Shown here: positions 1 through 62,858 of the stretch, in pieces
Position numbering within the stretch: position 1 is the stretch's first letter
Layout: each line of letters begins with the position of its first letter
IMG/VR virus record: IMGVR_UViG_3300024999_000030
Coordinates: 62,001-126,000 of that record
DNA: 64,000 nt
Strand: one strand, 5' to 3'
Notes under the pieces: generated by a model
Database searches by the model: none
The model's input: the letters and a program-made list of their open reading frames with translations, nothing else
What the model was told of the DNA's origin: nothing
Program-made: the position numbers and the translations under genes

Positions 1-1
1 G

Positions 2-772
2 GGGAAGGGAACTGTTTCTTCTACTGTAACTGGCGCTAGAGGCGCAGCTCGGGTTGGTTCTGGTGGCTCACCTCCAGGCACTATTAGAGGTCAATATGGG
101 GAAACGAGAATAGACAGTAGAGGTCGTAGATATTTACATAGTGGAATTGATATTTCCGGTAAAGAAGGAACAGTATTTCCTTCTCCTGTGACGGGGATAG
201 CCACCTATCACCCAGAGGGTTTTCCTGGATATAAAAATATGGGAAATACGGTTAGCGTAATTACTGGTAACGAGGAGCATGTGTTTGGTCATTTATCTGG
301 TATTCCCGATGGGTTTAAAAACGGTCCAGTAAACATTGGTGAACCAATTGGTCTAGTTGGAAGTACGGGCCGCTCTACGGGCCCGCATATTCATTACGAA
401 GTGAGGAGTTTAGACTCTTCTAATCGTTCACGCACGGCTGGTGGCAGAATAGTTACTATCGAACCACCTCAAAATAATGTTTTATCATTACGCGCAGCGG
501 TAAGTAATCTTCCACCTCGTATTTCGCCCACTGTGCCTAAGTTACCCTCTTCATTGCCAACTAGTGACGTCACTTCATCGTCCAAGTTAATCGCTAGCAA
601 TGAAATGGCAACCAACACTAAAGCCCCTTCTTCGCAGATGGATTCAAATCAAAATGAACCCAAATCAAAGGGGCCCGTTAATAAAACTACAACTGTTAAT
701 GCCGCTCTCATTCAAACCAAAAATGCTCCTCTTGAAAATGAATCTACTGGCGGAACCCCAGGAAGCAAATGA
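2..772 (+). CDS. 5'-truncated virion/tail protein with M23 (LytM-type) metallopeptidase domain and S/T/P-rich C-terminal tail
   Basis: Frame is open from nt 2, upstream of the track's GTG at 188. It has HSGID (HxxxD, nt 137-151) and GSTGRSTGPHIHYEV (HxH), both M23 zinc-ligand motifs. Its stop overlaps the next ATG (ATGA, 769-772). Confidence 0.85.
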   Translation, partial: GKGTVSSTVTGARGAARVGSGGSPPGTIRGQYGETRIDSRGRRYLHSGIDISGKEGTVFPSPVTGIATYHPEGFPGYKNMGNTVSVITGNEEHVFGHLSGIPDGFKNGPVNIGEPIGLVGSTGRSTGPHIHYEVRSLDSSNRSRTAGGRIVTIEPPQNNVLSLRAAVSNLPPRISPTVPKLPSSLPTSDVTSSSKLIASNEMATNTKAPSSQMDSNQNEPKSKGPVNKTTTVNAALIQTKNAPLENESTGGTPGSK

Positions 773-47898: not shown

Positions 47899-47916
47899 AT
47901 TACCTTGGAGGTTAAT

Positions 47917-48726
47917 ATGGTTCCACAGTTAATTCAAATAGAATCCTCCACAGCATGTAGTGCTGCATGTGATTTTTGCCCACATAGTTCACTTCAGAGA
48001 AAAATGGGTTCTATGACGGATGCTTTGTTTTTAAAAATTATTAACGATGCTAATAATATGGGAATAAAGCACATTCTTCTTTTTCTTAATGGTGAGCCTT
48101 TGATTTTTAATCGTTTTTTTTACTGGCTTGAAGAATTGCGTCAGCGGAATATGGTGACTACTATCTTTACTAATGCTTCACATTTAACTGAAGATAAAGC
48201 TCATCGTTTAATTTCTTACGCTGATGTAATTAGAGATATTTTTTTCAGCGTTGCTGGTATAAATAAGGAAACCTGTTTTAATCTTACTGGTTTAGATTTT
48301 GATACGGTGGTTTCTAATGTTAAATATTTTGTGAATCTGAATAATGGTTTAATCCCAATTGCCGCTCATATGCCACTATATAGCAAAACAGTAGCCTTTT
48401 CGAAGCAATGGAAATTATTTTGGTCAGATGTGGTTGGTAGGGCCGATTTAACCGATTATTATAATTTTGCTGGATTAGTCACGCCAGAGAAAAGTCAAAG
48501 AAAAAAAGCGTTTTGTGGTCGCCTTACTCATTTAACAGTGTTATATGATGGTAGGGTGTGTCTGTGCTGTATGGACCCAGAGGGACAAGTAATTTTAGGA
48601 GATCTAAACACTCAGTCTATCACGGAAGTTTATAATGGTGAAATAATGGAAAAATATCGTATGGCCCATCACCGTGGAGACTTTTCTTACCCGTTGTGTT
48701 GTAACTGCAATATGAATGAAGTATAA
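47917..48726 (+). CDS. Radical SAM protein with SPASM/twitch domain
   Basis: CSAACDFC (CxxxCxxC), GEPL, and C-terminal CGRL...YDGRVCLCCMD...CCNC. Start moved from the track's TTG at 47905 to the ATG at 47917 behind GGAGGT. Confidence 0.9.
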   Translation: MVPQLIQIESSTACSAACDFCPHSSLQRKMGSMTDALFLKIINDANNMGIKHILLFLNGEPLIFNRFFYWLEELRQRNMVTTIFTNASHLTEDKAHRLISYADVIRDIFFSVAGINKETCFNLTGLDFDTVVSNVKYFVNLNNGLIPIAAHMPLYSKTVAFSKQWKLFWSDVVGRADLTDYYNFAGLVTPEKSQRKKAFCGRLTHLTVLYDGRVCLCCMDPEGQVILGDLNTQSITEVYNGEIMEKYRMAHHRGDFSYPLCCNCNMNEV

Positions 48727-48727
48727 T
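48699..48727 (+). promoter_or_regulatory. Sigma70-like promoter TTGTAA-17-TATAAT upstream of gmd
   Basis: Consensus -10 with 17-bp spacing, overlapping the end of the radical SAM gene. Confidence 0.45.
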
Positions 48728-48763
48728 ATTGTGGTTATCTAACTTAAGAGGAAAGGAATTGAT

Positions 48764-49738
48764 ATGAAAAAGGCATTAGTTACTGGTATTTATGGACAAG
48801 ATGGTGGTTTTTTAGCAAAACAGCTACTTCAAGAGAACTATGAAGTGTGGGGTGTAAAGCGCCGCTCAGCCTCATCTATTCCATGGCGGCTGGAAGCACT
48901 TGGTATCTTATCTCACCCAAATCTCCATATTATTGAGGGAGATGTAACAGATCCAATTTCCATGTTAGACTGTGTAAAACGCTCTCAACCAGATGAAGTT
49001 TATAATACGGCAGCCATGAGTCATGTGGGAACCTCATTTAAACAGCCTCTTGCCACTGCCCAAATTGATGGGTTGGGAGTTCTAAATATATTAGAGGCTA
49101 TTCGTACATTAGCTCCTGAAGCTAGATTTGTACAGTGTTCCACCTCGGAGCTTTATGGTAATTTACCCCCGGAGCAACAATCTCTAGGCGTATATCATCC
49201 ACGTAGTCCATATGGGGTGGCAAAGCTTTTTGGTTTTTGGACTACAGTTAATTATCGTGAAACATATAATATTTTTGCTTGCAATTCCATTTGCTATAAT
49301 CACGAATCAGCTTTACGCGGCGAAGACTTTGTTACTAGAAAAATTACACTTGGCTTAGCTGATATTGTAGCTGGTAAAAGCAAGGTGATTAAGTTGGGAA
49401 ATATTGATGCTCGTCGAGATTGGCAACATGCTAAAGATGCGTGTCGAGCAATGATTATGATGGCCCGCGCGGATGTAGCGGATGATTTTGTTGTTGCTAC
49501 TGGAGAATCTCATTCTGTACGAGAGTTTATTCAATTGGCGGTGAAGAAAGCTGGCTTAGGAGATGATTGTGAACGTTTTATTGAAATCGATCCACAGTTT
49601 TATCGTCCTGCTGAGGTCCCAGATTTGAAAGGGAATCCAGATAAAATTATGAAAACTTTGGGATGGAAACCTATTACATCTTACGAACAGTTAGTCGAGG
49701 AAATGGTTAATTATGATGTCTTTGGGAAGAAGCCTTGA
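48764..49738 (+). CDS. gmd: GDP-mannose 4,6-dehydratase
   Basis: KKALVTGIYGQDG, AAMSHVGTSF, STSELYG, PRSPYGVAK (YxxxK), NHESALRGEDFVTRKIT, LGNIDARRDW and YRPAEV. Confidence 0.95.
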   Translation: MKKALVTGIYGQDGGFLAKQLLQENYEVWGVKRRSASSIPWRLEALGILSHPNLHIIEGDVTDPISMLDCVKRSQPDEVYNTAAMSHVGTSFKQPLATAQIDGLGVLNILEAIRTLAPEARFVQCSTSELYGNLPPEQQSLGVYHPRSPYGVAKLFGFWTTVNYRETYNIFACNSICYNHESALRGEDFVTRKITLGLADIVAGKSKVIKLGNIDARRDWQHAKDACRAMIMMARADVADDFVVATGESHSVREFIQLAVKKAGLGDDCERFIEIDPQFYRPAEVPDLKGNPDKIMKTLGWKPITSYEQLVEEMVNYDVFGKKP

Positions 49739-49763
49739 CTTTTTCTAACTTTAAAATTATATT
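49735..49763 (+). promoter_or_regulatory. Sigma70-like promoter TTGACT-17-TATATT upstream of the tubulin gene
   Basis: The -35 overlaps the gmd stop codon; exact 17-bp spacer. Confidence 0.7.
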
Positions 49764-49799: not shown

Positions 49800-51104
49800 A
49801 TGAGTGATAACGAATTTAAGATAGAGGCTACTGGAAATAGTGGCATTCATATCGAGAGTACTGGCGGAGTTAAAATTGAAGCAAAAGCTGGAACTCCGGT
49901 AGAGGTGAGAGGAGTAAAAGTGGGAATGACAGGTGAGCTTGCGATTCGTTTCGGTGTCATCGGTGCCGGGCAGGGAGGCTCTAGAATAGCCGAGGTGTTT
50001 GGTGCGCTGGGTTACCCATCTTGTGCCATTAACACGGCCAAACAAGATCTAAAATATATTAAACTGCCTGAAGACCGTAAACTTTGTATGGAATATGGTC
50101 TTGGCGGCGCAGGACGAGACATTCAATTAGGTGCCGAAGCCTTTACTGCTCATCGAGAATCTGTGCAGGCCCTTATTGATCGCACTTTTTCTGATGATGT
50201 GGACTATGCATTAGTGTGTGTTGGTGGTGGTGGTGGTACGGGATCAGGTGTAGCCGAACAACTTATTACGTTGTTACATTCTTATAATATGCCGGTTGGT
50301 ATGATTTACACTTTACCTCAATCTAATGAAGACGCTTTAACCCACGCTAATGCCGTTAAAGTGTTGGATAAGCTCAGTAAATTGGTTAAGGAAAAAATAC
50401 TCACTACTCTTATCGTGGTAGATAACGCTAAGATTGAAGCCATTTATCCTTCTTTATCTACTGTGGCTTTTTGGCAGAAAGCAAATGGTGACTTAGTTAA
50501 TATTCTCCATCAATTCAATCGTCTTACTGCACAGCCATCTCGTTTTGTATCTCTTGATCCCATGGACTTTGCTAAAATTATAACTGAGGGAGGGTGTACT
50601 GTATATGGAGCAGCTAGACTCTCAGAATATAAAGATGCAGAAAGCCTTGCGCAGACGGTAATTAACAGTGTTAAATCCGGCCTATTAGCCTCTGAATTTA
50701 CTCTATCTGAAGCCACAATGGGTGGATTAATTGTTACTGGTTCATTTGATATGCTTTCAACTGTTCCACAGGAAGATATCAATTATGCTTTATATAATCT
50801 TACTTCTATAGTTGGCCATGCTGGTCTTTATAGAGGAATTTATGATTTAGATTCTACGGATGCTGGACATGGCCTTGTGGTTTATACTATGTTGAGTGGT
50901 CTTGGTGTGCCCCATCGTAGAGTTGAAGCCCTTATCCAACGTGGCGAAGAGGGCGCTCAAGCCCTTGAGATTAAAAAGAATGATCATGCTAAAATGAACG
51001 TTATTGATTCTGATTCTTCCAGCGCCGATAATGACCGTCTTAAAAACATGCAAGCTAAACATGGTCCATTGGGTAAACTTTTGGGAAATAGAAAGAAGCC
51101 TTAA
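49800..51104 (+). CDS. Tubulin/FtsZ-superfamily GTPase
   Basis: GVIGAGQGGSRI (T1), NTAKQDL, GGAGRDIQLG, GGGGGTGSG (signature loop), VVDN and LDPMDF (T7-like loop). AAGGAG RBS. Confidence 0.92.
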   Translation: MSDNEFKIEATGNSGIHIESTGGVKIEAKAGTPVEVRGVKVGMTGELAIRFGVIGAGQGGSRIAEVFGALGYPSCAINTAKQDLKYIKLPEDRKLCMEYGLGGAGRDIQLGAEAFTAHRESVQALIDRTFSDDVDYALVCVGGGGGTGSGVAEQLITLLHSYNMPVGMIYTLPQSNEDALTHANAVKVLDKLSKLVKEKILTTLIVVDNAKIEAIYPSLSTVAFWQKANGDLVNILHQFNRLTAQPSRFVSLDPMDFAKIITEGGCTVYGAARLSEYKDAESLAQTVINSVKSGLLASEFTLSEATMGGLIVTGSFDMLSTVPQEDINYALYNLTSIVGHAGLYRGIYDLDSTDAGHGLVVYTMLSGLGVPHRRVEALIQRGEEGAQALEIKKNDHAKMNVIDSDSSSADNDRLKNMQAKHGPLGKLLGNRKKP

Positions 51105-51113
51105 GGAGAGAAG

Positions 51114-51278
51114 ATGAACTTTATAAAAGGTTTAGGGTCTTTGGGTTTATGGAATTTCATATTTTTCCAGTGGTTTTTTACTAGATTGGCTTTTAAATAT
51201 GATTTAAATACTAATGCTTATCTGGGATGGAAAATTCTTTTCCCGGTAGTTCCATTGACTCGATGGATTTTTAATTAA
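51114..51278 (+). CDS. 54-aa aromatic/hydrophobic small protein (below track cutoff)
   Basis: AAGGAG RBS. MNFIKGLGSLGLWNFIFFQWFFTRLAFKYDLNTNAYLGWKILFPVVPLTRWIFN; ends before the terminator. Confidence 0.7.
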   Translation: MNFIKGLGSLGLWNFIFFQWFFTRLAFKYDLNTNAYLGWKILFPVVPLTRWIFN

Positions 51279-51298: not shown

Positions 51299-51322
51299 GG
51301 CGCCCGCAAGGGCGCCTTTTTT
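51299..51322 (+). terminator. Rho-independent terminator
   Basis: GGCGCCC-GCAA-GGGCGCC followed by T6 (7-bp stem, GNRA loop). Confidence 0.92.
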
Positions 51323-51334
51323 GTTTCTTTTAGT

Positions 51335-51344
51335 CTATTAATGA
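51335..51344 (+). promoter_or_regulatory. Candidate late promoter variant CTATTAATGA
   Basis: Directly after the terminator. The context ctattaat(g)ataattgtta resembles 63572. About 30 nt before the ATG at 51374. Confidence 0.4.
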
Positions 51345-51373
51345 TAATTGTTATATGGATTGAGGAAAATATA

Positions 51374-51858
51374 ATGACAAAAATAATTTTTCTTTTTGGA
51401 AAAGAGGCTAAAAAATGTACTAAATGTCAACAAGATAAGTTATTATCAGAATTTCCAAAAAACAAAAGGGAAAAGAATAAAATATTATTAAGAAAGAAAG
51501 CACAAATACGCAGAAAAGCTAGAGCCCTACAAGACCCAGAATATAGATTGCTTCTTTGCTGTAGGAGCCGAATTAGCGATGCTATTAGAAGAAATAGGGG
51601 TTTTAGTGGAAAAAATCAAACCACTAAACAGCTAATAGGATGTTCATTATTACAACTTAGGCAACATATTGAAAGTAAGTGGCAACCGGGAATGACTTGG
51701 GAAAATTATGGTATCCGAGGGTGGCACATAGATCATATTAAACCATGTGCTTCGTTTATTCTAACGGACGAAAAACAATTACAACAATGTTTTTTCATTA
51801 TACAAATCTTCAGCCCTTGTGGTGGAGAGATAATTTAACGAAAGGAGCGAAAACATGA
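51374..51858 (+). pseudogene. Degenerate/frameshifted HNH endonuclease-like gene
   Basis: Has KKCTKC, LIGCS...HIE and MTWENYG..GWHIDHIKPCASF. After a T6 run (51790-51795) the -1 frame continues HYTNLQPLWWRDNLTKG and stops at TGA 51856-58, overlapping the amidase ATG. Confidence 0.8.
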
Positions 51859-52496
51859 AATTTAATACTGATTATTCCGCAACAACCACGGATTATTATC
51901 TGGTGGAAACAGTAAAACAAGGCATAACACTTCATTATACTGCTGGCAGCACTGCTTCTGGAGCCATTAGCACGTTATGTCAACAAGATATGGTATGTGT
52001 GCCTTTTGTGGTGGATAAAGATGGCACTGTCTATCAACTTTTTAATCCAAAATATTATGCTTTTCATTTGGGGATCCGTGGAGCAGCAGAAGGTTATAAA
52101 AAAGGACATTTTGATAAAAAATTTCTAAGTGTGGAAATCGTCAATGAGGGACCATTAAAAAAAGTTGGTTCAGATTATTTATGGTGGCCTAAAAATTGGG
52201 GAGCTAAATATACAGGAAAAGTAGTTAATTATTCTTTTCGTGGTTTTGATTATCATGCGGCATTTCCAGAGGTTCAAATCCAGGCTGTTTGTGAATTAAT
52301 AAAACATCTTTGTACTGAGTTTAATATTTCTAAAAGTTTAGTGCCAAAAGATAAACGTGAATTATTAGATTTAGATTATATGGATACCTTTGAGGGGATA
52401 TGTTCGCATGTTAATTTCAGGTGGGACAAATGGGACATTCCAGGTGAACCAGTCTTTCCGTGGGATAGGCTACAAAAGTATTTAGAAGACAAATGA
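51855..52496 (+). CDS. N-acetylmuramoyl-L-alanine amidase (Amidase_2), probable endolysin
   Basis: ITLHYTAG, FVVDKDGTVYQ, SVEIVNEG and ICSHVNFRWDKWD (zinc ligands H/H/D plus catalytic E). Confidence 0.88.
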   Translation: MKFNTDYSATTTDYYLVETVKQGITLHYTAGSTASGAISTLCQQDMVCVPFVVDKDGTVYQLFNPKYYAFHLGIRGAAEGYKKGHFDKKFLSVEIVNEGPLKKVGSDYLWWPKNWGAKYTGKVVNYSFRGFDYHAAFPEVQIQAVCELIKHLCTEFNISKSLVPKDKRELLDLDYMDTFEGICSHVNFRWDKWDIPGEPVFPWDRLQKYLEDK

Positions 52497-53398
52497 TTGA
52501 AATTACAGATCAGATAACCGGCATATATGAAAAAATTACAATAATCAATGAATTGCATTGGTCGCATAAACTTATGCATATTAATGAAGCTTGGGCTAGG
52601 GCAACAGGTAAAGGCGTTAAAATAGGTATAGTAGATACTGGTTGCGACATTCATCATCCAGATTTAAATGGCGCTATTGTTGGATGTCATAACTTTTCTC
52701 AATCATCGGGGCAATGCGAAGATATGCATGGGCATGGCACACACATAGCGGGTATTATAGCGGCTAAAATTACTGGCTCCGGTGTTTCGGGCGTAGCTCA
52801 TGGAGCTAGTTTATATATCGCAAGAGCTATAGATAATTCTGGAGTAGGAAATCCAGCAAACATAGCTAGGGCTATTGAAGCTTGTATAGATGCTGGATGT
52901 GATGTTATTAATTTATCTCTTGGGTGTCCAGAAGAATACATTCCAATGTCTCGGGCTATTCAACGAGCTACTGAAAAAAATATTATTGTTGTAGCTGCAG
53001 CAGGCAATTGTGGAGATAATAACGTTTCAACGGTAGAAGAACAGTGGCCAGCTAGATTACCATTTGTTATTTCTGTAGCTGCTATTAATAAAAAACTAAT
53101 TAACGCTTCATGGTCAGCTTCTGGTGATATTGAGTTTTCTGCTCCAGGAGTTGATATTTTATCTTGTTATCCAGGTGGTAGGTATGCTACTATGAGTGGC
53201 ACGAGTCAGGCCTGCCCGTTTATAACTGGGGCGTGTGCTCTAATGAAAGAAATAAAACGCGATATAAATAGAGAGCAAATTGTTAAATTGCTGTCGCAGT
53301 ATTCTATGTCTATAGGACATCAAGCCAGCTTTGGGGCCGGGGTGGTTAACGTTGTTGCTGCTTTAGAGTCCCTAGAGGGTATGTTGAAGCGAGGTTAA
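52493..53398 (+). CDS. Subtilisin-family (S8) serine protease with no signal peptide
   Basis: Catalytic triad IVDTG / HGTHIAG / GTSQACP, oxyanion AAGN. Confidence 0.95.
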   Translation: MIEITDQITGIYEKITIINELHWSHKLMHINEAWARATGKGVKIGIVDTGCDIHHPDLNGAIVGCHNFSQSSGQCEDMHGHGTHIAGIIAAKITGSGVSGVAHGASLYIARAIDNSGVGNPANIARAIEACIDAGCDVINLSLGCPEEYIPMSRAIQRATEKNIIVVAAAGNCGDNNVSTVEEQWPARLPFVISVAAINKKLINASWSASGDIEFSAPGVDILSCYPGGRYATMSGTSQACPFITGACALMKEIKRDINREQIVKLLSQYSMSIGHQASFGAGVVNVVAALESLEGMLKRG

Positions 53399-54109
53399 AT
53401 GAGTCAAGCGTCCGACCAAGCACGTGAGGAAATTTTAAAAGAAATCAAAGAGCTGCTTTCTGAAGGTGGTTCAGTTTCTCTTATTCCTAAATTAAGGGTT
53501 CCCAAACCTCCTCTTGCAGACAGAATGGCCGAAAAGCTTACTAATCTAGTAGGTTCCTGGCGCTTTGCACTATCCATGGTCGGCGCAGTTGTTCTATGGT
53601 TTCTTTGCAATATTGGGTTTTTCTTTTTTATGCCCTCTTTTGACCCATATCCATTTAATTTTTTAAATTTAATGTTAGCGGCGGTAGCAGCTTTTCAGGC
53701 TCCAGCTATTTTAATGGCACAAAACGCACAATATAGACGTGATTTACAACGAGAGATCCATCAATATGAAGTTATTTTAGCTGTTGAGGGTGAACTTCGT
53801 GCGTTATATAATAAATTATCTCATCTTGGAACTGATGTCGCTGTTGCTATTGAGGAGCTAGAGTTTTCACAAGATCAATCTAAAAAAGAATTGGGGGAAC
53901 TTTCAAATAATGTATCAAAAAATCTTAGTAGTACTTATGGCTGTCATTTAAAAATGGAAAAACTTCAAGATACAGCAGAAGATATTGTAACTAAAACTTC
54001 CATAATGCTTAGTCTAATTAAGAAACTAAAAGATGCCTCAGATCCATTTCCAATTACAAAAGAGATAAATGATAAAGGAAGGATTTTTCCAGATGATCCA
54101 AAGGGTTAA
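53399..54109 (+). CDS. DUF1003-like membrane protein with C-terminal coiled coil (candidate holin)
   Basis: LADRMAEKLTNLVGSWRF and FDPYPFNFLNLMLAAVAAFQAPAILMAQN match the DUF1003 pattern; two hydrophobic segments. Confidence 0.8.
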   Translation: MSQASDQAREEILKEIKELLSEGGSVSLIPKLRVPKPPLADRMAEKLTNLVGSWRFALSMVGAVVLWFLCNIGFFFFMPSFDPYPFNFLNLMLAAVAAFQAPAILMAQNAQYRRDLQREIHQYEVILAVEGELRALYNKLSHLGTDVAVAIEELEFSQDQSKKELGELSNNVSKNLSSTYGCHLKMEKLQDTAEDIVTKTSIMLSLIKKLKDASDPFPITKEINDKGRIFPDDPKG

Positions 54110-54125
54110 CCAGAAGGAGAAGAAA

Positions 54126-54401
54126 ATGTGGAATAAAATTAAAACCTGTATAATGAATTTAAAACAATGTTTATGCTCTAGCATTAAAGATATTCAGCTG
54201 GAAGAGTTAAAAAAACAATATCAAATGCAATTAAATGAAAATATTCACCTGCATCGTAAATTAGAAGAATGCGAAATTGCTATGCAGGCAGCTAAAGATA
54301 CAGTTACTGAGCTTAGTGATAAATTAAAAAAGACTGCTACAGATGAAATTCGCAAAAAAACTGTACTTCCTAAGAAAAACAATCAAAAACCCAAACGCTA
54401 A
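54126..54401 (+). CDS. Coiled-coil hypothetical protein
   Basis: AAGGAG RBS favours the ATG at 54126 over the track's 54069; heptad-like, with a basic tail. Confidence 0.65.
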   Translation: MWNKIKTCIMNLKQCLCSSIKDIQLEELKKQYQMQLNENIHLHRKLEECEIAMQAAKDTVTELSDKLKKTATDEIRKKTVLPKKNNQKPKR

Positions 54402-54430
54402 TTGACTTTTATCTTTAATAGTTTTATATT
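54402..54430 (+). promoter_or_regulatory. Sigma70-like promoter TTGACT-17-TATATT upstream of the replication operon
   Basis: Starts immediately after the upstream stop; exact 17-bp spacer. Confidence 0.7.
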
Positions 54431-54434
54431 ATAC

Positions 54435-54460
54435 AAGAGGGGTTTTATCCTCTTTTGTAT
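54435..54460 (+). terminator. Possible terminator hairpin closing the lysis operon
   Basis: AAGAGG-8nt-CCTCTT followed by TTGTAT; extends to ATACAAGAGG/CCTC(TT)TTGTAT. Confidence 0.4.
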
Positions 54461-54474
54461 TATTGGAGACAAAT

Positions 54475-59677: not shown

Positions 59678-62647
59678 ATGAACAAGTTAAGTTTATCTCG
59701 AAAAATATTGTCAGATATTACGGTATATGCTAAATATGCTAAATTTATTCCTAAATTAAAACGTAGAGAGACGTGGGAAGAAATTGTAACACGTAATATG
59801 GAAATGCATATAAGAAAATTTCCAAAATTAAAAACAGAAATTGAAGATGCTTTTAAATTAGTATATAGTAAAAAAGTTGTACCTTCGATGAGGTCAATGC
59901 AGTTTGCTGGGAAACCCATAGAGCTGTCTCCTAATCGCGGCTACAATTGTTCTTTTGTTGCTATTGATGATTTTCACGCTTTTTCCGAGACCATGTTTTT
60001 ATTGTTGGGTGGGTCAGGTGTTGGGTTTAGTGTCCAGCGGCACCATGTAGAACAACTGCCAGTAATATATAAGCCAATTAAATCACGGCGCTTTTTGGTC
60101 GGCGACTCAATTGAAGGGTGGGCAGACGCTGTTAAGGCGCTTTTCCGTGCTTATATGTGCGGAAAAACTTTACCAGAATATGATTTTAGAGATATTCGTC
60201 CGAAGGGTGCTCGTCTTATTACATCTGGGGGTAAGGCCCCAGGACCGGAACCTCTAAAAGACTGTTTACATAATATTCAAAAAATTTTAGATAGAAAAGT
60301 GGGTGGATCTAAGTTAACCACATTAGAATGTCATGATATTATGTGTTATATTGCTGATGCTGTTTTAGCTGGGGGAATTCGGCGTGCTGCCATGATTAGT
60401 TTATTTTCTTTTGACGATGAGGACATGCTTACTTGTAAATATGGCAATTGGTATGAATTAAATCCTCAACGTGCAAGAGCTAATAATTCTGTAGTTATTT
60501 TACGTCATCGGATCAAAGAAAAGGAATTTAAACAACTTTGGAAAAAAGTGCAAATGTCAAAAAGTGGAGAGCCAGGTATTTTCTTTACAAATAATAAAGA
60601 AATGGGTATCAATCCTTGTTTATCGGGAGACACTTGGATACATACTACGCAAGGAGCTAAACAAGTTAACGAACTGGTGAATAAAAAATTCACGGCGATT
60701 GTGAATGGAAAACATTTTGATTCTACGGAGTCTGGTTTTTTTAGCACTGGTGTTAAATCGTTGCTATCACTTGAAACAAACAATGGAAACAATTTAAAAT
60801 TGACAAATAATCATAAACTACTTAAGGTTCTTAAACGAACCTCTAAAAAAATTTATACGGATTGGGTAGAAGCTAATCAACTAACCGTTGGAGACGAGAT
60901 TTTGTTGTCTGTTCATGATGGCGTAGCAAAATTTGGTGAAAACAACCCAGGCGATTTTGATCGCGGCTGGTTACTCGGAGAGCTTCTGGGAGATGGTTGT
61001 TTTTCGGGGCCATCCTCCGCTTGTTTAGACTTTTGGGGGCCCTCTGCTCAACATATGTCTTCATTAGCTTATAATAGAATTAAAGGCGTTTTAGAAACTC
61101 GCTCAGATTTCGGTGTTATAGATCAATATCAAAAAGACAAATTACGTATTCGTTGTGTTGCGGTAGCTAATTTAGCAAAACAATATAATATTACGCAAAA
61201 GACAAAGTTATTAACTCCTGCAATTGAAGCTGAGAGTTATGATTTTATTGCTGGATGTTTGAGAGGATTGTTTGATGCGGATGGCACTGTAATAGGAAAT
61301 CAGATTAAGGGAGTATCTATTCGATTGGGACAAGTAAGTTTGAATAATTTACAATGTGCACAAAGAATGTTATCCCGATTGGGAATAGTTTCTAAAATTT
61401 ATAAAAATCGTCACCCCGCTGAATTCAGATATATGCCGGATGGAAAAGGAGGAACAAAAAAATATTGGTGCCAATCTATGAATGAATTAGTAATTTCTGG
61501 ACACAATATGCATGTGTTTCAGTCTGTAGTGGGATTTGATGAACCAGCAAAAGCCACCAAACTTGCGAATTTATTAGGAACATATAAACGAAAGCTTAAT
61601 CGCGAACGTGGTTTAACGACCATCACAAAAATTATTCCCATTGGAGAGGCCGAGGTGTTTGACGCAACTATACCAGGGATTCATGAATTTTGTGCTAACG
61701 GTCTGCGGGCTCATAATTGTTCTGAAATTTCTCTTAAATCGGCACAAATGTGTAACTTAACAGAAGTGAACGTATCCGATGTTCATAGCCAGGAAGACCT
61801 CAATGAACGCTGTCGTGTTGGTGCCTTTATTGGTACATTGCAAGCGAGCTATACTGAGTTTCATTATCTCAGAGATCTTTGGCAAAAAAATTGTGAGAAG
61901 GATGCCTTGCTTGGTGTCGGTATGACTGGAATTTGTTCTGGTGGTATATTAAATTTAAATCTTGAAATGGCAGCAGATATTTGTGTAAAAGAAAATGAGC
62001 GCACCGCTGCTCTTTTAGGTATTAATAAAGCCGCTAGGGTAACTTGCATTAAACCCAGTGGTACCACAAGTTTAGTGTTTGGTTGTTCATCTGGAATTCA
62101 TGAATGGCACGATGAATATTATATTAGAAGAATGCGTATTGGTAAAAATGAAGAATTATACAAATATTTAAGTGAACATTGTCCAGATATTTTAGAAGAT
62201 GATTTTTTTAAGCCTACTATTCAAGCGGTAATTAGTATTCCACAAAAGGCCCCAGAGGGAGCTATTTTAAGAAAACATAGTGATCCAATTAAACTTTTAG
62301 AGCGCGTAAAAAAGTTTTCTCAAGAATGGGTTGTACCTGGACATAACGACGGTGATAACAGACATAATGTTTCGGTTACAGTTAGCTTAAAGGATGATGA
62401 GTATCAAATTACTGGCGAGTGGTTATGGAAAAATAGGGACCATTATACTGGTATTACAGTGCTCCCGCTTGATGATCATTCGTATATGCAAATGCCCTTT
62501 GAATCATGTACTGAAGAGGTGTATGATAAAATGTTACGTAAAATTAAAGATATTGATTTGTCTAAGGTTGTTGAGATAGACGACCACACCACGTTAACAG
62601 AACAGGCGGCATGTGCTGGGGGAGCCTGCACTATTACCAGAGTATAA
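59678..62647 (+). CDS. nrdJ: Class II (B12-dependent) ribonucleotide reductase, monomeric RTPR type, intein-interrupted
   Basis: RETWEE, PSMRSMQ, NCSF, GGSGVGFS, GGIRRAAMI, NP|C-SEI, TCIKPSGT and C-terminal CAGGAC. Confidence 0.92.
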   Translation: MNKLSLSRKILSDITVYAKYAKFIPKLKRRETWEEIVTRNMEMHIRKFPKLKTEIEDAFKLVYSKKVVPSMRSMQFAGKPIELSPNRGYNCSFVAIDDFHAFSETMFLLLGGSGVGFSVQRHHVEQLPVIYKPIKSRRFLVGDSIEGWADAVKALFRAYMCGKTLPEYDFRDIRPKGARLITSGGKAPGPEPLKDCLHNIQKILDRKVGGSKLTTLECHDIMCYIADAVLAGGIRRAAMISLFSFDDEDMLTCKYGNWYELNPQRARANNSVVILRHRIKEKEFKQLWKKVQMSKSGEPGIFFTNNKEMGINPCLSGDTWIHTTQGAKQVNELVNKKFTAIVNGKHFDSTESGFFSTGVKSLLSLETNNGNNLKLTNNHKLLKVLKRTSKKIYTDWVEANQLTVGDEILLSVHDGVAKFGENNPGDFDRGWLLGELLGDGCFSGPSSACLDFWGPSAQHMSSLAYNRIKGVLETRSDFGVIDQYQKDKLRIRCVAVANLAKQYNITQKTKLLTPAIEAESYDFIAGCLRGLFDADGTVIGNQIKGVSIRLGQVSLNNLQCAQRMLSRLGIVSKIYKNRHPAEFRYMPDGKGGTKKYWCQSMNELVISGHNMHVFQSVVGFDEPAKATKLANLLGTYKRKLNRERGLTTITKIIPIGEAEVFDATIPGIHEFCANGLRAHNCSEISLKSAQMCNLTEVNVSDVHSQEDLNERCRVGAFIGTLQASYTEFHYLRDLWQKNCEKDALLGVGMTGICSGGILNLNLEMAADICVKENERTAALLGINKAARVTCIKPSGTTSLVFGCSSGIHEWHDEYYIRRMRIGKNEELYKYLSEHCPDILEDDFFKPTIQAVISIPQKAPEGAILRKHSDPIKLLERVKKFSQEWVVPGHNDGDNRHNVSVTVSLKDDEYQITGEWLWKNRDHYTGITVLPLDDHSYMQMPFESCTEEVYDKMLRKIKDIDLSKVVEIDDHTTLTEQAACAGGACTITRV
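60617..61717 (+). mobile_element. Full-length intein with LAGLIDADG homing endonuclease (367 aa)
   Basis: Starts CLSGDTWI, has LLGELLGDG and LRGLFDADG, ends EVFD...ANGLRAHN. The +1 residue is the active-site Cys of the NPCxE motif. Confidence 0.95.
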
Positions 62648-62676
62648 TTGAAAAAAACCTATTTTAGAGTTATATT
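62648..62676 (+). promoter_or_regulatory. Sigma70-like promoter TTGAAA-17-TATATT
   Basis: Begins immediately after the nrdJ stop; followed by an AAGGAG RBS. Confidence 0.65.
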
Positions 62677-62693
62677 TACATAAGGAGAGCAAA

Positions 62694-62858
62694 ATGACGA
62701 GAGATCAGGTAAAATGTTCCCATTGCGGTGGAGACACAAAGTTTGTAAGAAAATATGAAACAGTGTATATATTTCAGTGTATTCTTTGTCGTAGAAAAAC
62801 TCAAATTATGACTGAAATGATTAGGGAGCCGGAGAAGAAAAAGAATGAGAGGAAATAA
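62694..62858 (+). CDS. 54-aa zinc-ribbon protein (below track cutoff)
   Basis: AAGGAG RBS. MTRDQVKCSHCGG...FQCILCRRK (CxxC...CxxC). Confidence 0.75.
   Translation: MTRDQVKCSHCGGDTKFVRKYETVYIFQCILCRRKTQIMTEMIREPEKKKNERK

What the first reader, a model, noticed from the sequence alone, without database searches (positions are those of the whole stretch)
51855..54401. Atypical lysis cassette: amidase coupled to a subtilisin protease and a DUF1003 membrane protein
Seen: amidase and S8 share an ATGA overlap, the S8 stop abuts the DUF1003 ATG, and a coiled-coil gene follows. All lie between a late-type motif and a hairpin. No classical holin or spanin is visible. The S8 has an intact triad but no signal peptide or long prodomain. 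Inference: DUF1003 acts as holin, and the protease breaches a proteinaceous envelope (S-layer or sheath), activates the lysin, or destroys defence proteins.
Basis: partly seen in the sequence, partly recalled or inferred. Interest (0 to 1): 0.7.

Follow-up and report, generated by a model that had tools for sequence, protein, structure and literature searches.

The report
Jumbo-phage endolysin–subtilase–DUF1003 late operon
A family of giant groundwater phages keeps its cell-wall-cutting enzyme in one late operon with a cytoplasmic-type subtilisin protease and a two-helix membrane protein of unknown function. This may be an unusual way of bursting the host, but only the wall-cutting part is well supported.

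Summary
Window 51855-54401 holds Amidase_2, an S8 subtilase, a DUF1003 membrane protein and a small coiled-coil ORF. The genes are tightly packed and sit between two terminator hairpins. Upstream lies a CTATTAAT motif that also precedes tail-fibre, baseplate and virion genes.

The window is part of a 332.7-kb jumbo phage from groundwater. The same order, tubulin – wall hydrolase – S8 – DUF1003 – (small ORF) – UvsW helicase, recurs in at least 10 related contigs, down to about 49% S8 identity.

The key new result concerns a sister lineage whose flanking genes are 84% identical. There the amidase is replaced, in the same slot, by an unrelated GH24 lysozyme. So the slot is an endolysin slot.

- The S8 is most like intracellular subtilisins. 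S8 genes in other large phages are not linked to lysis genes.
- DUF1003 is a widespread cellular family that keeps its invariant residues here. It had no S8 or Amidase_2 neighbour in 157 other loci.
- "Protease activates the lysin" is disfavoured by the enzyme swap.
- DUF1003 as holin is plausible (about 0.4) but untested.

This is a new variant of a known kind, of moderate interest.

The parts
51299..51322 (+). Intrinsic-terminator-like hairpin (7 G-C pairs followed by a T-run). It closes the upstream tubulin unit.
   Evidence: The same hairpin lies after the tubulin gene in L215 and L003.
51335..51342 (+). CTATTAAT promoter-like motif, shared with virion structural genes (late type).
   Evidence: The motif is conserved about 30 nt before the hydrolase start in L215 and L003. 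Structural genes follow the motif elsewhere in the genome.
51374..51858 (+). HNH homing-endonuclease gene, inserted between the promoter/RBS and the amidase. It is frameshifted at a T6 run (51790-51795). The corrected frame ends in a TGA that overlaps the amidase ATG.
   Evidence: phrog_1035 at 1.6e-09; translations. The gene is absent from L215, L009, L010 and L181.
51855..52496 (+). Single-domain Amidase_2 endolysin (213 aa). It has no signal peptide, no TM segment and no cell-wall-binding domain.
   Evidence: Pfam PF01510 at 2.4e-14 and PHROG amidase/endolysin families. H27, E94, H185, K192 and D194 are conserved. It is the only PF01510 match in the genome. A GH24 lysozyme replaces it in L003.
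52493..53398 (+). S8 subtilase (301 aa) of the intracellular-subtilisin (ISP) type. It has an intact triad, a roughly 25-aa N-terminal extension, and neither a propeptide nor a signal peptide.
   Evidence: Pfam 6.3e-48 and phrog_3677 at 6e-74. The best solved match is 7xr8, 'major intracellular serine protease', at 1.4e-49. Invariant D48, H81, N172 and S238. It is the only PF00082 match in the genome.
53399..54109 (+). DUF1003 membrane protein (236 aa). It has two TM helices (about 54-77 and 85-107); TM2 continues as one long cytoplasmic helix to about residue 214.
   Evidence: Pfam PF06210 at 4.8e-26. AlphaFold2 model with mean pLDDT 84. Family-invariant residues are kept, but R110 is A in 9 of 9 phage-lineage copies and the C-terminal tail is about twice as long.
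54126..54401 (+). Small soluble helical/coiled-coil ORF (91 aa from ATG 54126, or 110 aa from 54069). It is a poorly conserved positional counterpart of the 89-172-aa ORFs in relatives, and it is absent from L003.
   Evidence: No Pfam or PHROG family match.
54435..54462 (+). Terminator-like hairpin with a T-run that closes the unit, just before the UvsW-type helicase gene.
   Evidence: A similar hairpin lies in L215.

Best explanation
The region is the late lysis operon of a clade of groundwater jumbo phages.

Shown:
- A terminator, then a CTATTAAT late-type motif, then a soluble single-domain wall hydrolase. The hydrolase is Amidase_2 here and was swapped for a GH24 lysozyme in a sister lineage.
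- The hydrolase gene is tightly coupled to an ISP-type S8 protease gene and a DUF1003 gene, and a terminator follows.

Inferred:
- Neither hydrolase has an export signal, so it needs a membrane lesion to reach the wall.
- The only membrane protein in the unit is a phage-adapted DUF1003. It probably has both ends in the cytoplasm (N-in/C-in), two TM helices and a long cytoplasmic stalk. The near-invariant R110 is lost in every copy.
- It is the best candidate for that membrane step, either as a holin or as a membrane-depolarising component (about 0.4).
- The S8 is made as a cytoplasmic enzyme. It most likely acts on host proteins or on DUF1003 around the time of lysis, not on the lysin.
- Whether the S8 works inside the cell, or in the envelope after release through the lesion, is open.
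For: - Gene content and junctions.
- The unit is bounded by terminators and preceded by a motif shared with tail-fibre, baseplate and virion genes. The same terminator-plus-motif lies before the hydrolase in L215 and L003.
- The order hydrolase–S8–DUF1003 is found wherever the contig reaches far enough, in at least 10 related contigs at 49-84% S8 identity.
- The amidase is replaced by a GH24 lysozyme (PF00959 at 6e-40, phrog_7 endolysin), while the flanking tubulin and helicase stay 84% identical.
- Neither hydrolase has a TM segment or signal peptide, and DUF1003 is the only TM protein in the unit.
- No known holin family was found in 10 small multi-TM proteins elsewhere in the genome, and no lipobox ORF suggesting an o-spanin was found.
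- All 9 phage-lineage DUF1003 copies carry R110A and a doubled C-terminal tail.
- Precedent: the phiKZ lysis cassette has a fifth, cytoplasmic gene that acts on the holin's cytoplasmic domain (PMC12894885).
Against: - The whole neighbourhood (epimerase–tubulin–…–helicase–DnaB) is syntenic, so conservation of the trio is not independent evidence of joint function.
- DUF1003 is a widespread cellular family (3654 representative hits; bacterial loci). Published work links it to stress tolerance (PMC4839699).
- The phage copy keeps almost every family-invariant residue, which is unlike typical holins.
- At 236 aa it is large for a holin.
- None of 157 other DUF1003 loci has an S8 or Amidase_2 neighbour.
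- Among the DUF1003 neighbours tested in seven other huge-phage loci, none matched a wall hydrolase. The ones identified were nucleotide-metabolism genes and a putative metallopeptidase.
- S8 genes of Bacillus and Moorella phages and of contig L218 are not near lysis genes.
- A second wall enzyme, a signal-anchored SLT transglycosylase, exists elsewhere in the genome.
- The genome has dozens of other small membrane proteins that could be the real holin.
Confidence: 0.4

Rival explanations
1. Only the first gene is a lysis gene. The S8 and DUF1003 are unrelated accessory genes that happen to be co-transcribed with the endolysin. The S8 would be a cytoplasmic ISP-type protease for host takeover or proteostasis. 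DUF1003 would be a borrowed cellular membrane or stress protein. The true holin would be one of the many small membrane proteins elsewhere, as in T4-like large phages, whose lysis genes are scattered.
For: - The best solved match of the S8 is an intracellular serine protease.
- S8 genes in SP-15, Tsamsa and the Moorella phage lie among early or replication genes.
- In the distant phage-like contig L218, the S8 sits beside a signal peptidase, a trypsin-like protease, DnaJ and Hsp70, upstream of a UvsW helicase.
- DUF1003 in other huge phages lies beside nucleotide-metabolism genes.
- DUF1003 keeps its cellular invariant residues.
- The cassette is embedded between tubulin and replication genes.
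Against: - The tight overlaps between hydrolase and S8 persist even after the hydrolase was exchanged.
- The unit carries the late structural-gene motif rather than the sigma-70-like TTGACT-N17-TATATT boxes seen before the tubulin and helicase genes.
- No holin family was recognised elsewhere in the genome.
- The phage-lineage changes in DUF1003 (R110A, long tail) suggest a changed function.
Confidence: 0.35
2. Protease-gated pore. The S8 cleaves the long cytoplasmic stalk or the N-terminus of DUF1003 and so triggers hole formation. This would be a proteolytic lysis clock, with the same logic as protease-activated bacterial gasdermins or the regulator–holin pair of phiKZ.
For: - S8 and DUF1003 are adjacent in every relative, with gaps from -11 to +18 nt.
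- The cytoplasmic helix of the phage lineage is unusually long, with a tail of 114-147 aa against a family median of 65.
- An ISP-type enzyme would be cytoplasmic, on the same side as the stalk.
- phiKZ offers a precedent for a cytoplasmic regulator that binds a holin's cytoplasmic domain.
Against: - No direct evidence exists.
- DUF1003 has no gasdermin-like fold.
- No cleavage motif has been identified.
Confidence: 0.08
3. The S8 is a virion or prohead maturation protease that merely lies next to the endolysin.
For: - The unit has late-type expression signals.
- No S77 or S78 prohead protease was found in the genome.
Against: - The S8 is not located near recognisable head genes.
- The genome has a ClpP homologue that matches head-maturation-protease PHROGs.
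- Phage Tsamsa carries both an S8 and a separate head maturation protease.
Confidence: 0.07
4. The S8 activates the endolysin by cleaving a pro-form, like clostridial Csp proteases acting on SleC.
For: The lysin and protease genes are translationally coupled.
Against: - Two unrelated single-domain enzymes (213-aa Amidase_2 and 167-aa GH24) fill the slot, and neither has an extra pro-segment.
- NCBIfam Csp models score far below their cut-offs.
Confidence: 0.03

Closest known systems
Multigene lysis cassettes of Caudoviricetes (lambda S-R-Rz/Rz1; phiKZ holin–endolysin–spanins plus a cytoplasmic regulator, PMC12894885)
   Same: A late operon that combines a soluble endolysin with a membrane protein. 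The endolysin gene is exchangeable between relatives. An extra cytoplasmic gene sits inside the cassette, as in phiKZ.
   Different: - The membrane protein is not from any known holin family. It is a 236-aa member of the cellular DUF1003 family.
- There is no i-spanin/o-spanin pair in or near the unit.
- The extra gene is a full catalytic subtilase.
Intracellular subtilisin proteases (ISPs) of Bacillus (PDB 7xr8, 2x8j, 2wv7)
   Same: - The best sequence match among solved structures.
- No signal peptide and no classical propeptide.
- A short N-terminal extension.
- Cysteine-rich, as expected for a cytoplasmic enzyme.
- An intact Asp-His-Ser triad.
   Different: - Identity to Bacillota homologues is only about 36-41%.
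- The LIPY/F inhibitory motif is not clearly present.
- It is encoded by a phage, next to an endolysin.
S8 genes of large Bacillus and Moorella phages (SP-15 gp260, Tsamsa gp173, MTATph1 CDS0070; phrog_3677)
   Same: They belong to the same PHROG, are of similar length and lack an export signal.
   Different: Those genes lie among early, replication or unknown genes, not beside an endolysin or a DUF1003 gene.
Cellular DUF1003 proteins (for example GBS SAN_2180 and its Lactococcus lactis homologue)
   Same: Same Pfam family, same two-TM core, and the same invariant GSW…W…N…FDPYP…N…QAP.I.M.QN…D…E signature.
   Different: - The phage lineage has R110A in 9 of 9 copies, S107A in 8 of 9, and a C-terminal helix about twice as long.
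- The cellular proteins are stand-alone genes linked to stress tolerance, not to lysis.
Clostridial Csp subtilases with the cortex-lytic enzyme SleC, and bacterial gasdermins with their proteases
   Same: A subtilase is genetically paired with a wall hydrolase or a pore-forming protein, which gives a logic for protease-controlled envelope breach.
   Different: There is no pro-lysin, no gasdermin fold and no family membership. These are analogies only.

Membership tests
Phage holin (functional class) | Membrane protein with at least one TM helix and a charged cytoplasmic C-terminus | tested here: met
   Two TM helices (about 54-77 and 85-107) and a long charged C-terminal helix. At 236 aa it is large for a holin.
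Phage holin (functional class) | Encoded in the same late unit as a soluble endolysin | tested here: met
   Same terminator-bounded unit, one gene away from the endolysin, in all relatives.
Phage holin (functional class) | Homology to a described holin family | tested here: not met
   Pfam gives only DUF1003. PHROGs give no lysis family; the single match is phrog_16567 at 0.0097, of unknown function.
Phage holin (functional class) | Forms lethal membrane lesions that release the endolysin | not testable with these tools
   Needs expression or complementation assays.
DUF1003 (PF06210) | Score above the Pfam gathering threshold and the family's invariant residues | tested here: met
   91.4 bits against a cut-off of 27.4. 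G52, S53, W54, F56, W67, N71, D82, P85, N90, Q100, A101, P102, I104, M106, N109, D115 and E130 are kept. R110 and S107 are replaced.
Subtilase S8, intracellular (ISP) subgroup | Asp-His-Ser triad and oxyanion Asn | tested here: met
   D48, H81, S238 and N172 are invariant in 17 sequences.
Subtilase S8, intracellular (ISP) subgroup | No signal peptide and no I9-type propeptide; a short N-terminal extension | tested here: met
   No hydrophobic N-terminus. The nearest cellular homologues carry about 70 extra N-terminal residues. The alignment to ISP 7xr8 starts at residue 11.
Subtilase S8, intracellular (ISP) subgroup | N-terminal LIPY/F inhibitory motif and ISP dimer interface | tested here: inconclusive
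   A conserved [IV]-Y-[DE] at residues 11-13 may be the equivalent, but no structural test was done.
Curated S8 subfamilies (mycosin, CspBA, PatA and others) | Score above the NCBIfam cut-off | tested here: not met
   The best is mycosin, at 190 bits against a cut-off of 279. All others are far below their cut-offs.
Amidase_2 endolysin (T7 lysozyme / AmpD / PGRP fold) | Pfam match plus zinc ligands (His, His, Asp/Cys) and the catalytic Lys | tested here: met
   54 bits against a cut-off of 26. H27, H185, D194 and K192 are conserved in 13 sequences. No solved homologue was found by sequence.
Canonical three-step lysis system of diderm hosts | An i-spanin/o-spanin pair or a u-spanin | tested here: not met
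   The small ORF after DUF1003 has no TM segment or lipobox. A genome-wide lipobox scan found one antisense ORF only. The one weak Rz-like match (1e-4) lies far away, at G000 138542-139258.
Protease-activated lysin (Csp/SleC type) | The lysin carries a removable pro-segment | tested here: not met
   The Amidase_2 domain fills the 213-aa protein, and the GH24 domain fills the 167-aa substitute.

The most novel reading that the evidence does not exclude
A cellular DUF1003 membrane protein has been recruited as a new kind of holin whose opening is set by the co-encoded cytoplasmic subtilase, giving a proteolytic lysis clock. Alternatively, or in addition, the subtilase leaves through the lesion with the endolysin and digests protein tethers of the outer envelope, taking the place of the spanins this phage seems to lack.
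Probability: 0.1. Interest if true: 0.85.

Novelty: new variant of a known kind. Interest (0 to 1): 0.55.

Why it matters
- If DUF1003 is the membrane component, this would give a first function to a family found in thousands of bacteria, and it would add a new holin type.
- If the subtilase takes part in lysis, it would be a fourth kind of phage lysis effector, a protease, beside holins, endolysins and spanins/disruptins.
- That would bear on how spanin-less phages breach the outer envelope.
- Even on the modest reading, the swap of amidase for lysozyme locates the endolysin of an uncultured clade of huge phages.
- The motif work also defines a late promoter-like element (CTATTAAT) for that clade.

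Tried and rejected
- Nucleotide search of the cassette against GenBank phages: no match.
- Complex prediction of S8 with DUF1003: score 0.00, no verdict. This is not evidence either way.
- Fold searches with the DUF1003 model against the PDB and Swiss-Prot AlphaFold models: no meaningful match, all E > 0.1.
- Sequence search of the amidase against solved structures: nothing.
- Defence-system models (PADLOC): only a generic subtilase and weak IetS matches for the S8, and nothing for DUF1003 or the amidase. The 'destroys defence proteins' idea gains nothing from this.
- Holin families in 10 small multi-TM proteins: none. One is a PnuC-like fragment and one is DUF1360.
- Prohead protease families S77 and S78: none.
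- Host assignment failed.
  - ClpP identity is 52-63% to very different phyla and does not discriminate.
  - 'Relatives' cannot be drawn for a virus record.
  - Three calls with a wrong handle type failed.
- The sigma-70-like hit at 51348-51375 overlaps the HNH start codon and is absent from L215. It is judged spurious.
- The Enterococcus 'phage' DUF1003 hit is an unverified contig end and was disregarded.
Full report
**Setting.** The window is G000:C1:62001-126000 of a 332,730-bp virus record. Under the standard code it is 92% coding, and most genes are on the plus strand. The cassette sequence occurs in groundwater metagenomes. So this is an uncultured jumbo phage, and its host is unknown.

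**Observation.**
- ORFs and Pfam/PHROG scans confirm four genes. These are Amidase_2 (51855-52496), Peptidase_S8 (52493-53398), DUF1003 (53399-54109) and a small helical ORF (54069 or, more likely, 54126 to 54401).
- The ATGA overlap and the TAA-ATG junction are as described.
- Terminator-like hairpins bracket the unit at 51299-51316 and 54435-54454.
- Between the first hairpin and the amidase lies an HNH endonuclease gene (51374-51858). It is frameshifted at a T6 run. The shifted frame restores the usual HNH C-terminus and ends in a TGA that overlaps the amidase ATG.
- In the 84%-identical relative L215, the same terminator and upstream sequence lead straight into the amidase. So the HNH gene is a recent insertion.

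**The 'late-type motif'.**
- CTATTAAT lies at 51335-51342. Its raw count in the window is not above chance.
- Genome-wide, however, 20 of 43 plus-strand copies fall in the 7.5% of the genome that is intergenic (P about 6e-12). They usually sit 34-76 nt before a start codon. One caveat is that AT-rich spacers favour AT-rich words.
- Genes that follow the motif include a 2526-aa tail fibre, a baseplate wedge protein, a virion structural protein and a 799-aa protein with an M23 domain.
- L003 and L215 carry the terminator plus the motif about 30 nt before their hydrolase genes.
- In contrast, the tubulin and helicase genes on either side are preceded by sigma-70-like TTGACT-N17-TATATT boxes.
- The unit therefore looks like a late transcription unit set inside a replication region.

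**Conservation.** The 300-aa S8 has a clade of relatives at 49-84% identity. Every contig that could be read shows hydrolase–S8–DUF1003, usually followed by a small ORF and a UvsW-type helicase and preceded by a TubZ-like tubulin. Because the wider neighbourhood is syntenic too, this conservation alone does not prove joint function.

**The decisive comparison.**
- In L003 and L004, tubulin and helicase are 84% identical to the window's, S8 is 75% identical and DUF1003 is 74% identical.
- In those contigs, the gene before the S8 is not an amidase. It is a 167-aa GH24 phage lysozyme (PF00959 at 6e-40; phrog_7 endolysin at 7.5e-47), and it still overlaps the S8 start.
- Replacing one wall hydrolase with an unrelated one in a constant frame is typical of endolysin genes. 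It shows what the slot is for.
- Neither enzyme has a signal peptide, a TM segment or a wall-binding domain. So each needs a membrane lesion to reach the wall. Their small single-domain build fits a diderm host better than a Gram-positive one. This last point is an inference from general knowledge of endolysins.
- The amidase keeps H27, H185, D194 and K192, as expected for an active T7-lysozyme/AmpD-type enzyme.

**The S8.**
- D48, H81, N172 and S238 are invariant, and the roughly 70-residue propeptide of the nearest cellular homologues is missing.
- The best solved match is an intracellular serine protease, aligned from residue 11. No curated S8 subfamily is reached.
- Similar S8 genes are common in large Bacillus phages and occur in a Moorella phage. 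There they lie among early, replication or unknown genes, not next to lysins.
- In a more distant phage-like contig, the S8 is followed by a signal peptidase, a trypsin-like protease, DnaJ and Hsp70.
- The protease is therefore probably made as a cytoplasmic enzyme, and its link to lysis is specific to this lineage.
- Activation of the lysin by cleavage is unlikely, given the swap of two compact enzymes.

**DUF1003.**
- The family is large: 3654 representative hits. It is spread over many bacterial phyla in ordinary chromosomal settings. Published work links it only to stress tolerance in streptococci and lactococci.
- The AlphaFold2 model (mean pLDDT 84) shows a short amphipathic helix, then TM1, then a conserved FDPYP loop, then TM2. 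TM2 runs on as one helix to about residue 214. Nothing similar was found by fold search.
- The phage-lineage proteins keep almost all invariant residues. However, they have Ala for the near-invariant Arg110 in 9 of 9 copies and a C-terminal tail about twice the family median.
- In 77 other viral and 80 bacterial DUF1003 loci, my S8 and Amidase_2 profiles found no neighbour within 5 kb.
- Among the DUF1003 neighbours tested in seven other huge-phage loci, none matched a wall hydrolase. Those identified were dihydroorotate dehydrogenase, GAR synthetase, CTP synthase and a putative metallopeptidase, and most had no match at all.
- The case for DUF1003 as holin therefore rests on three things: its position, its topology, and the lack of another candidate in the unit.

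**Rest of the genome.**
- The amidase is the only Amidase_2 match in the genome, and there is no GH24 match.
- A 219-aa SLT transglycosylase with an N-terminal signal or anchor lies next to a ClpP homologue at G000 238894-240150.
- An M23 domain sits in a tail-type protein.
- Ten small multi-TM proteins match no holin family.
- A lipobox scan found no plausible o-spanin.
- One TM-plus-coiled-coil protein matches Rz-like spanins only weakly.
- No S77 or S78 prohead protease was found.

**Verdict.** The unit is very probably the late endolysin operon of this phage clade (about 0.75).
- DUF1003 supplying the membrane step is the best single reading, but it is uncertain (about 0.4).
- The near-equal rival (about 0.35) is that S8 and DUF1003 are unrelated accessory genes and the holin lies elsewhere.
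- The role of the subtilase is open. A host-directed or DUF1003-directed function is favoured over lysin activation.
- The arrangement is a new variant of a lysis cassette, confined so far to one lineage, and it is worth a simple expression test.

Noticed in passing
window 51374-51858: An HNH homing-endonuclease gene is inserted exactly between the promoter/RBS and the amidase start. It is frameshifted at a T6 run (51790-51795), which could be a pseudogene or an assembly error. It is absent from four relatives. An independent 75-kb contig (L002) has the identical sequence.
   Followed up: yes
window 51114-51278: A 54-aa very hydrophobic ORF with a good RBS lies between the tubulin gene and the terminator. 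Relatives L215, L003, L009 and L010 have no room for it. No family match.
   Followed up: partly
window 49800-51104: A TubZ/PhuZ-like tubulin (Tubulin plus TubZ-like_C domains) lies directly upstream of the hydrolase in all relatives. In L010 and L181 the gap is only about 10 nt, so there the hydrolase may be co-transcribed with tubulin.
   Followed up: partly
window 49735-49763 and 54402-54430: Identical sigma-70-like boxes (TTGACT-N17-TATATT) precede the tubulin and helicase genes. This suggests a promoter class different from the CTATTAAT units.
   Followed up: no
whole genome (for example window 19422, 37361, 51335, 63572): The CTATTAAT(A) motif lies 34-76 nt upstream of many structural genes. 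All 11 copies in the window are on the plus strand. A sigma-factor-like gene (G000 270838-271656) is itself led by the motif.
   Followed up: partly
G000:C1:238894-240150 (outside the window; L020 5894-7150): A bona fide ClpP homologue (52-63% identical to bacterial ClpP) is directly followed by a 219-aa SLT lytic transglycosylase with an N-terminal signal or anchor. This may be a secreted or SAR-type second lysin.
   Followed up: partly
window 1-772 (G000 60373-62772): A 799-aa protein with a C-terminal M23 peptidase domain, led by the motif. It is probably a tail-associated wall-piercing enzyme.
   Followed up: partly
G000:C1:138542-140421 (L197 1542-3421): A motif-led 238-aa protein has an N-terminal TM helix, a Q-rich coiled coil and a hydrophobic C-terminus, with a weak Rz-like match. 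Nearby is an 80-aa three-TM protein that resembles the end of the PnuC transporter. Both lie next to an IMP-dehydrogenase-like gene.
   Followed up: partly
L218 6001-12927: In a distant phage-like contig, a 308-aa S8 without a prodomain sits in a cluster with signal peptidase I, a trypsin-like protease, DnaJ and Hsp70, upstream of a UvsW helicase. This looks like a phage proteostasis module.
   Followed up: no
window 47905-49738: A radical-SAM-like protein (CxxxCxxC) and a GDP-mannose-dehydratase/epimerase gene lie upstream. Relatives carry glycosyltransferases and methyltransferases in the same place, which suggests a sugar-modification module.
   Followed up: no
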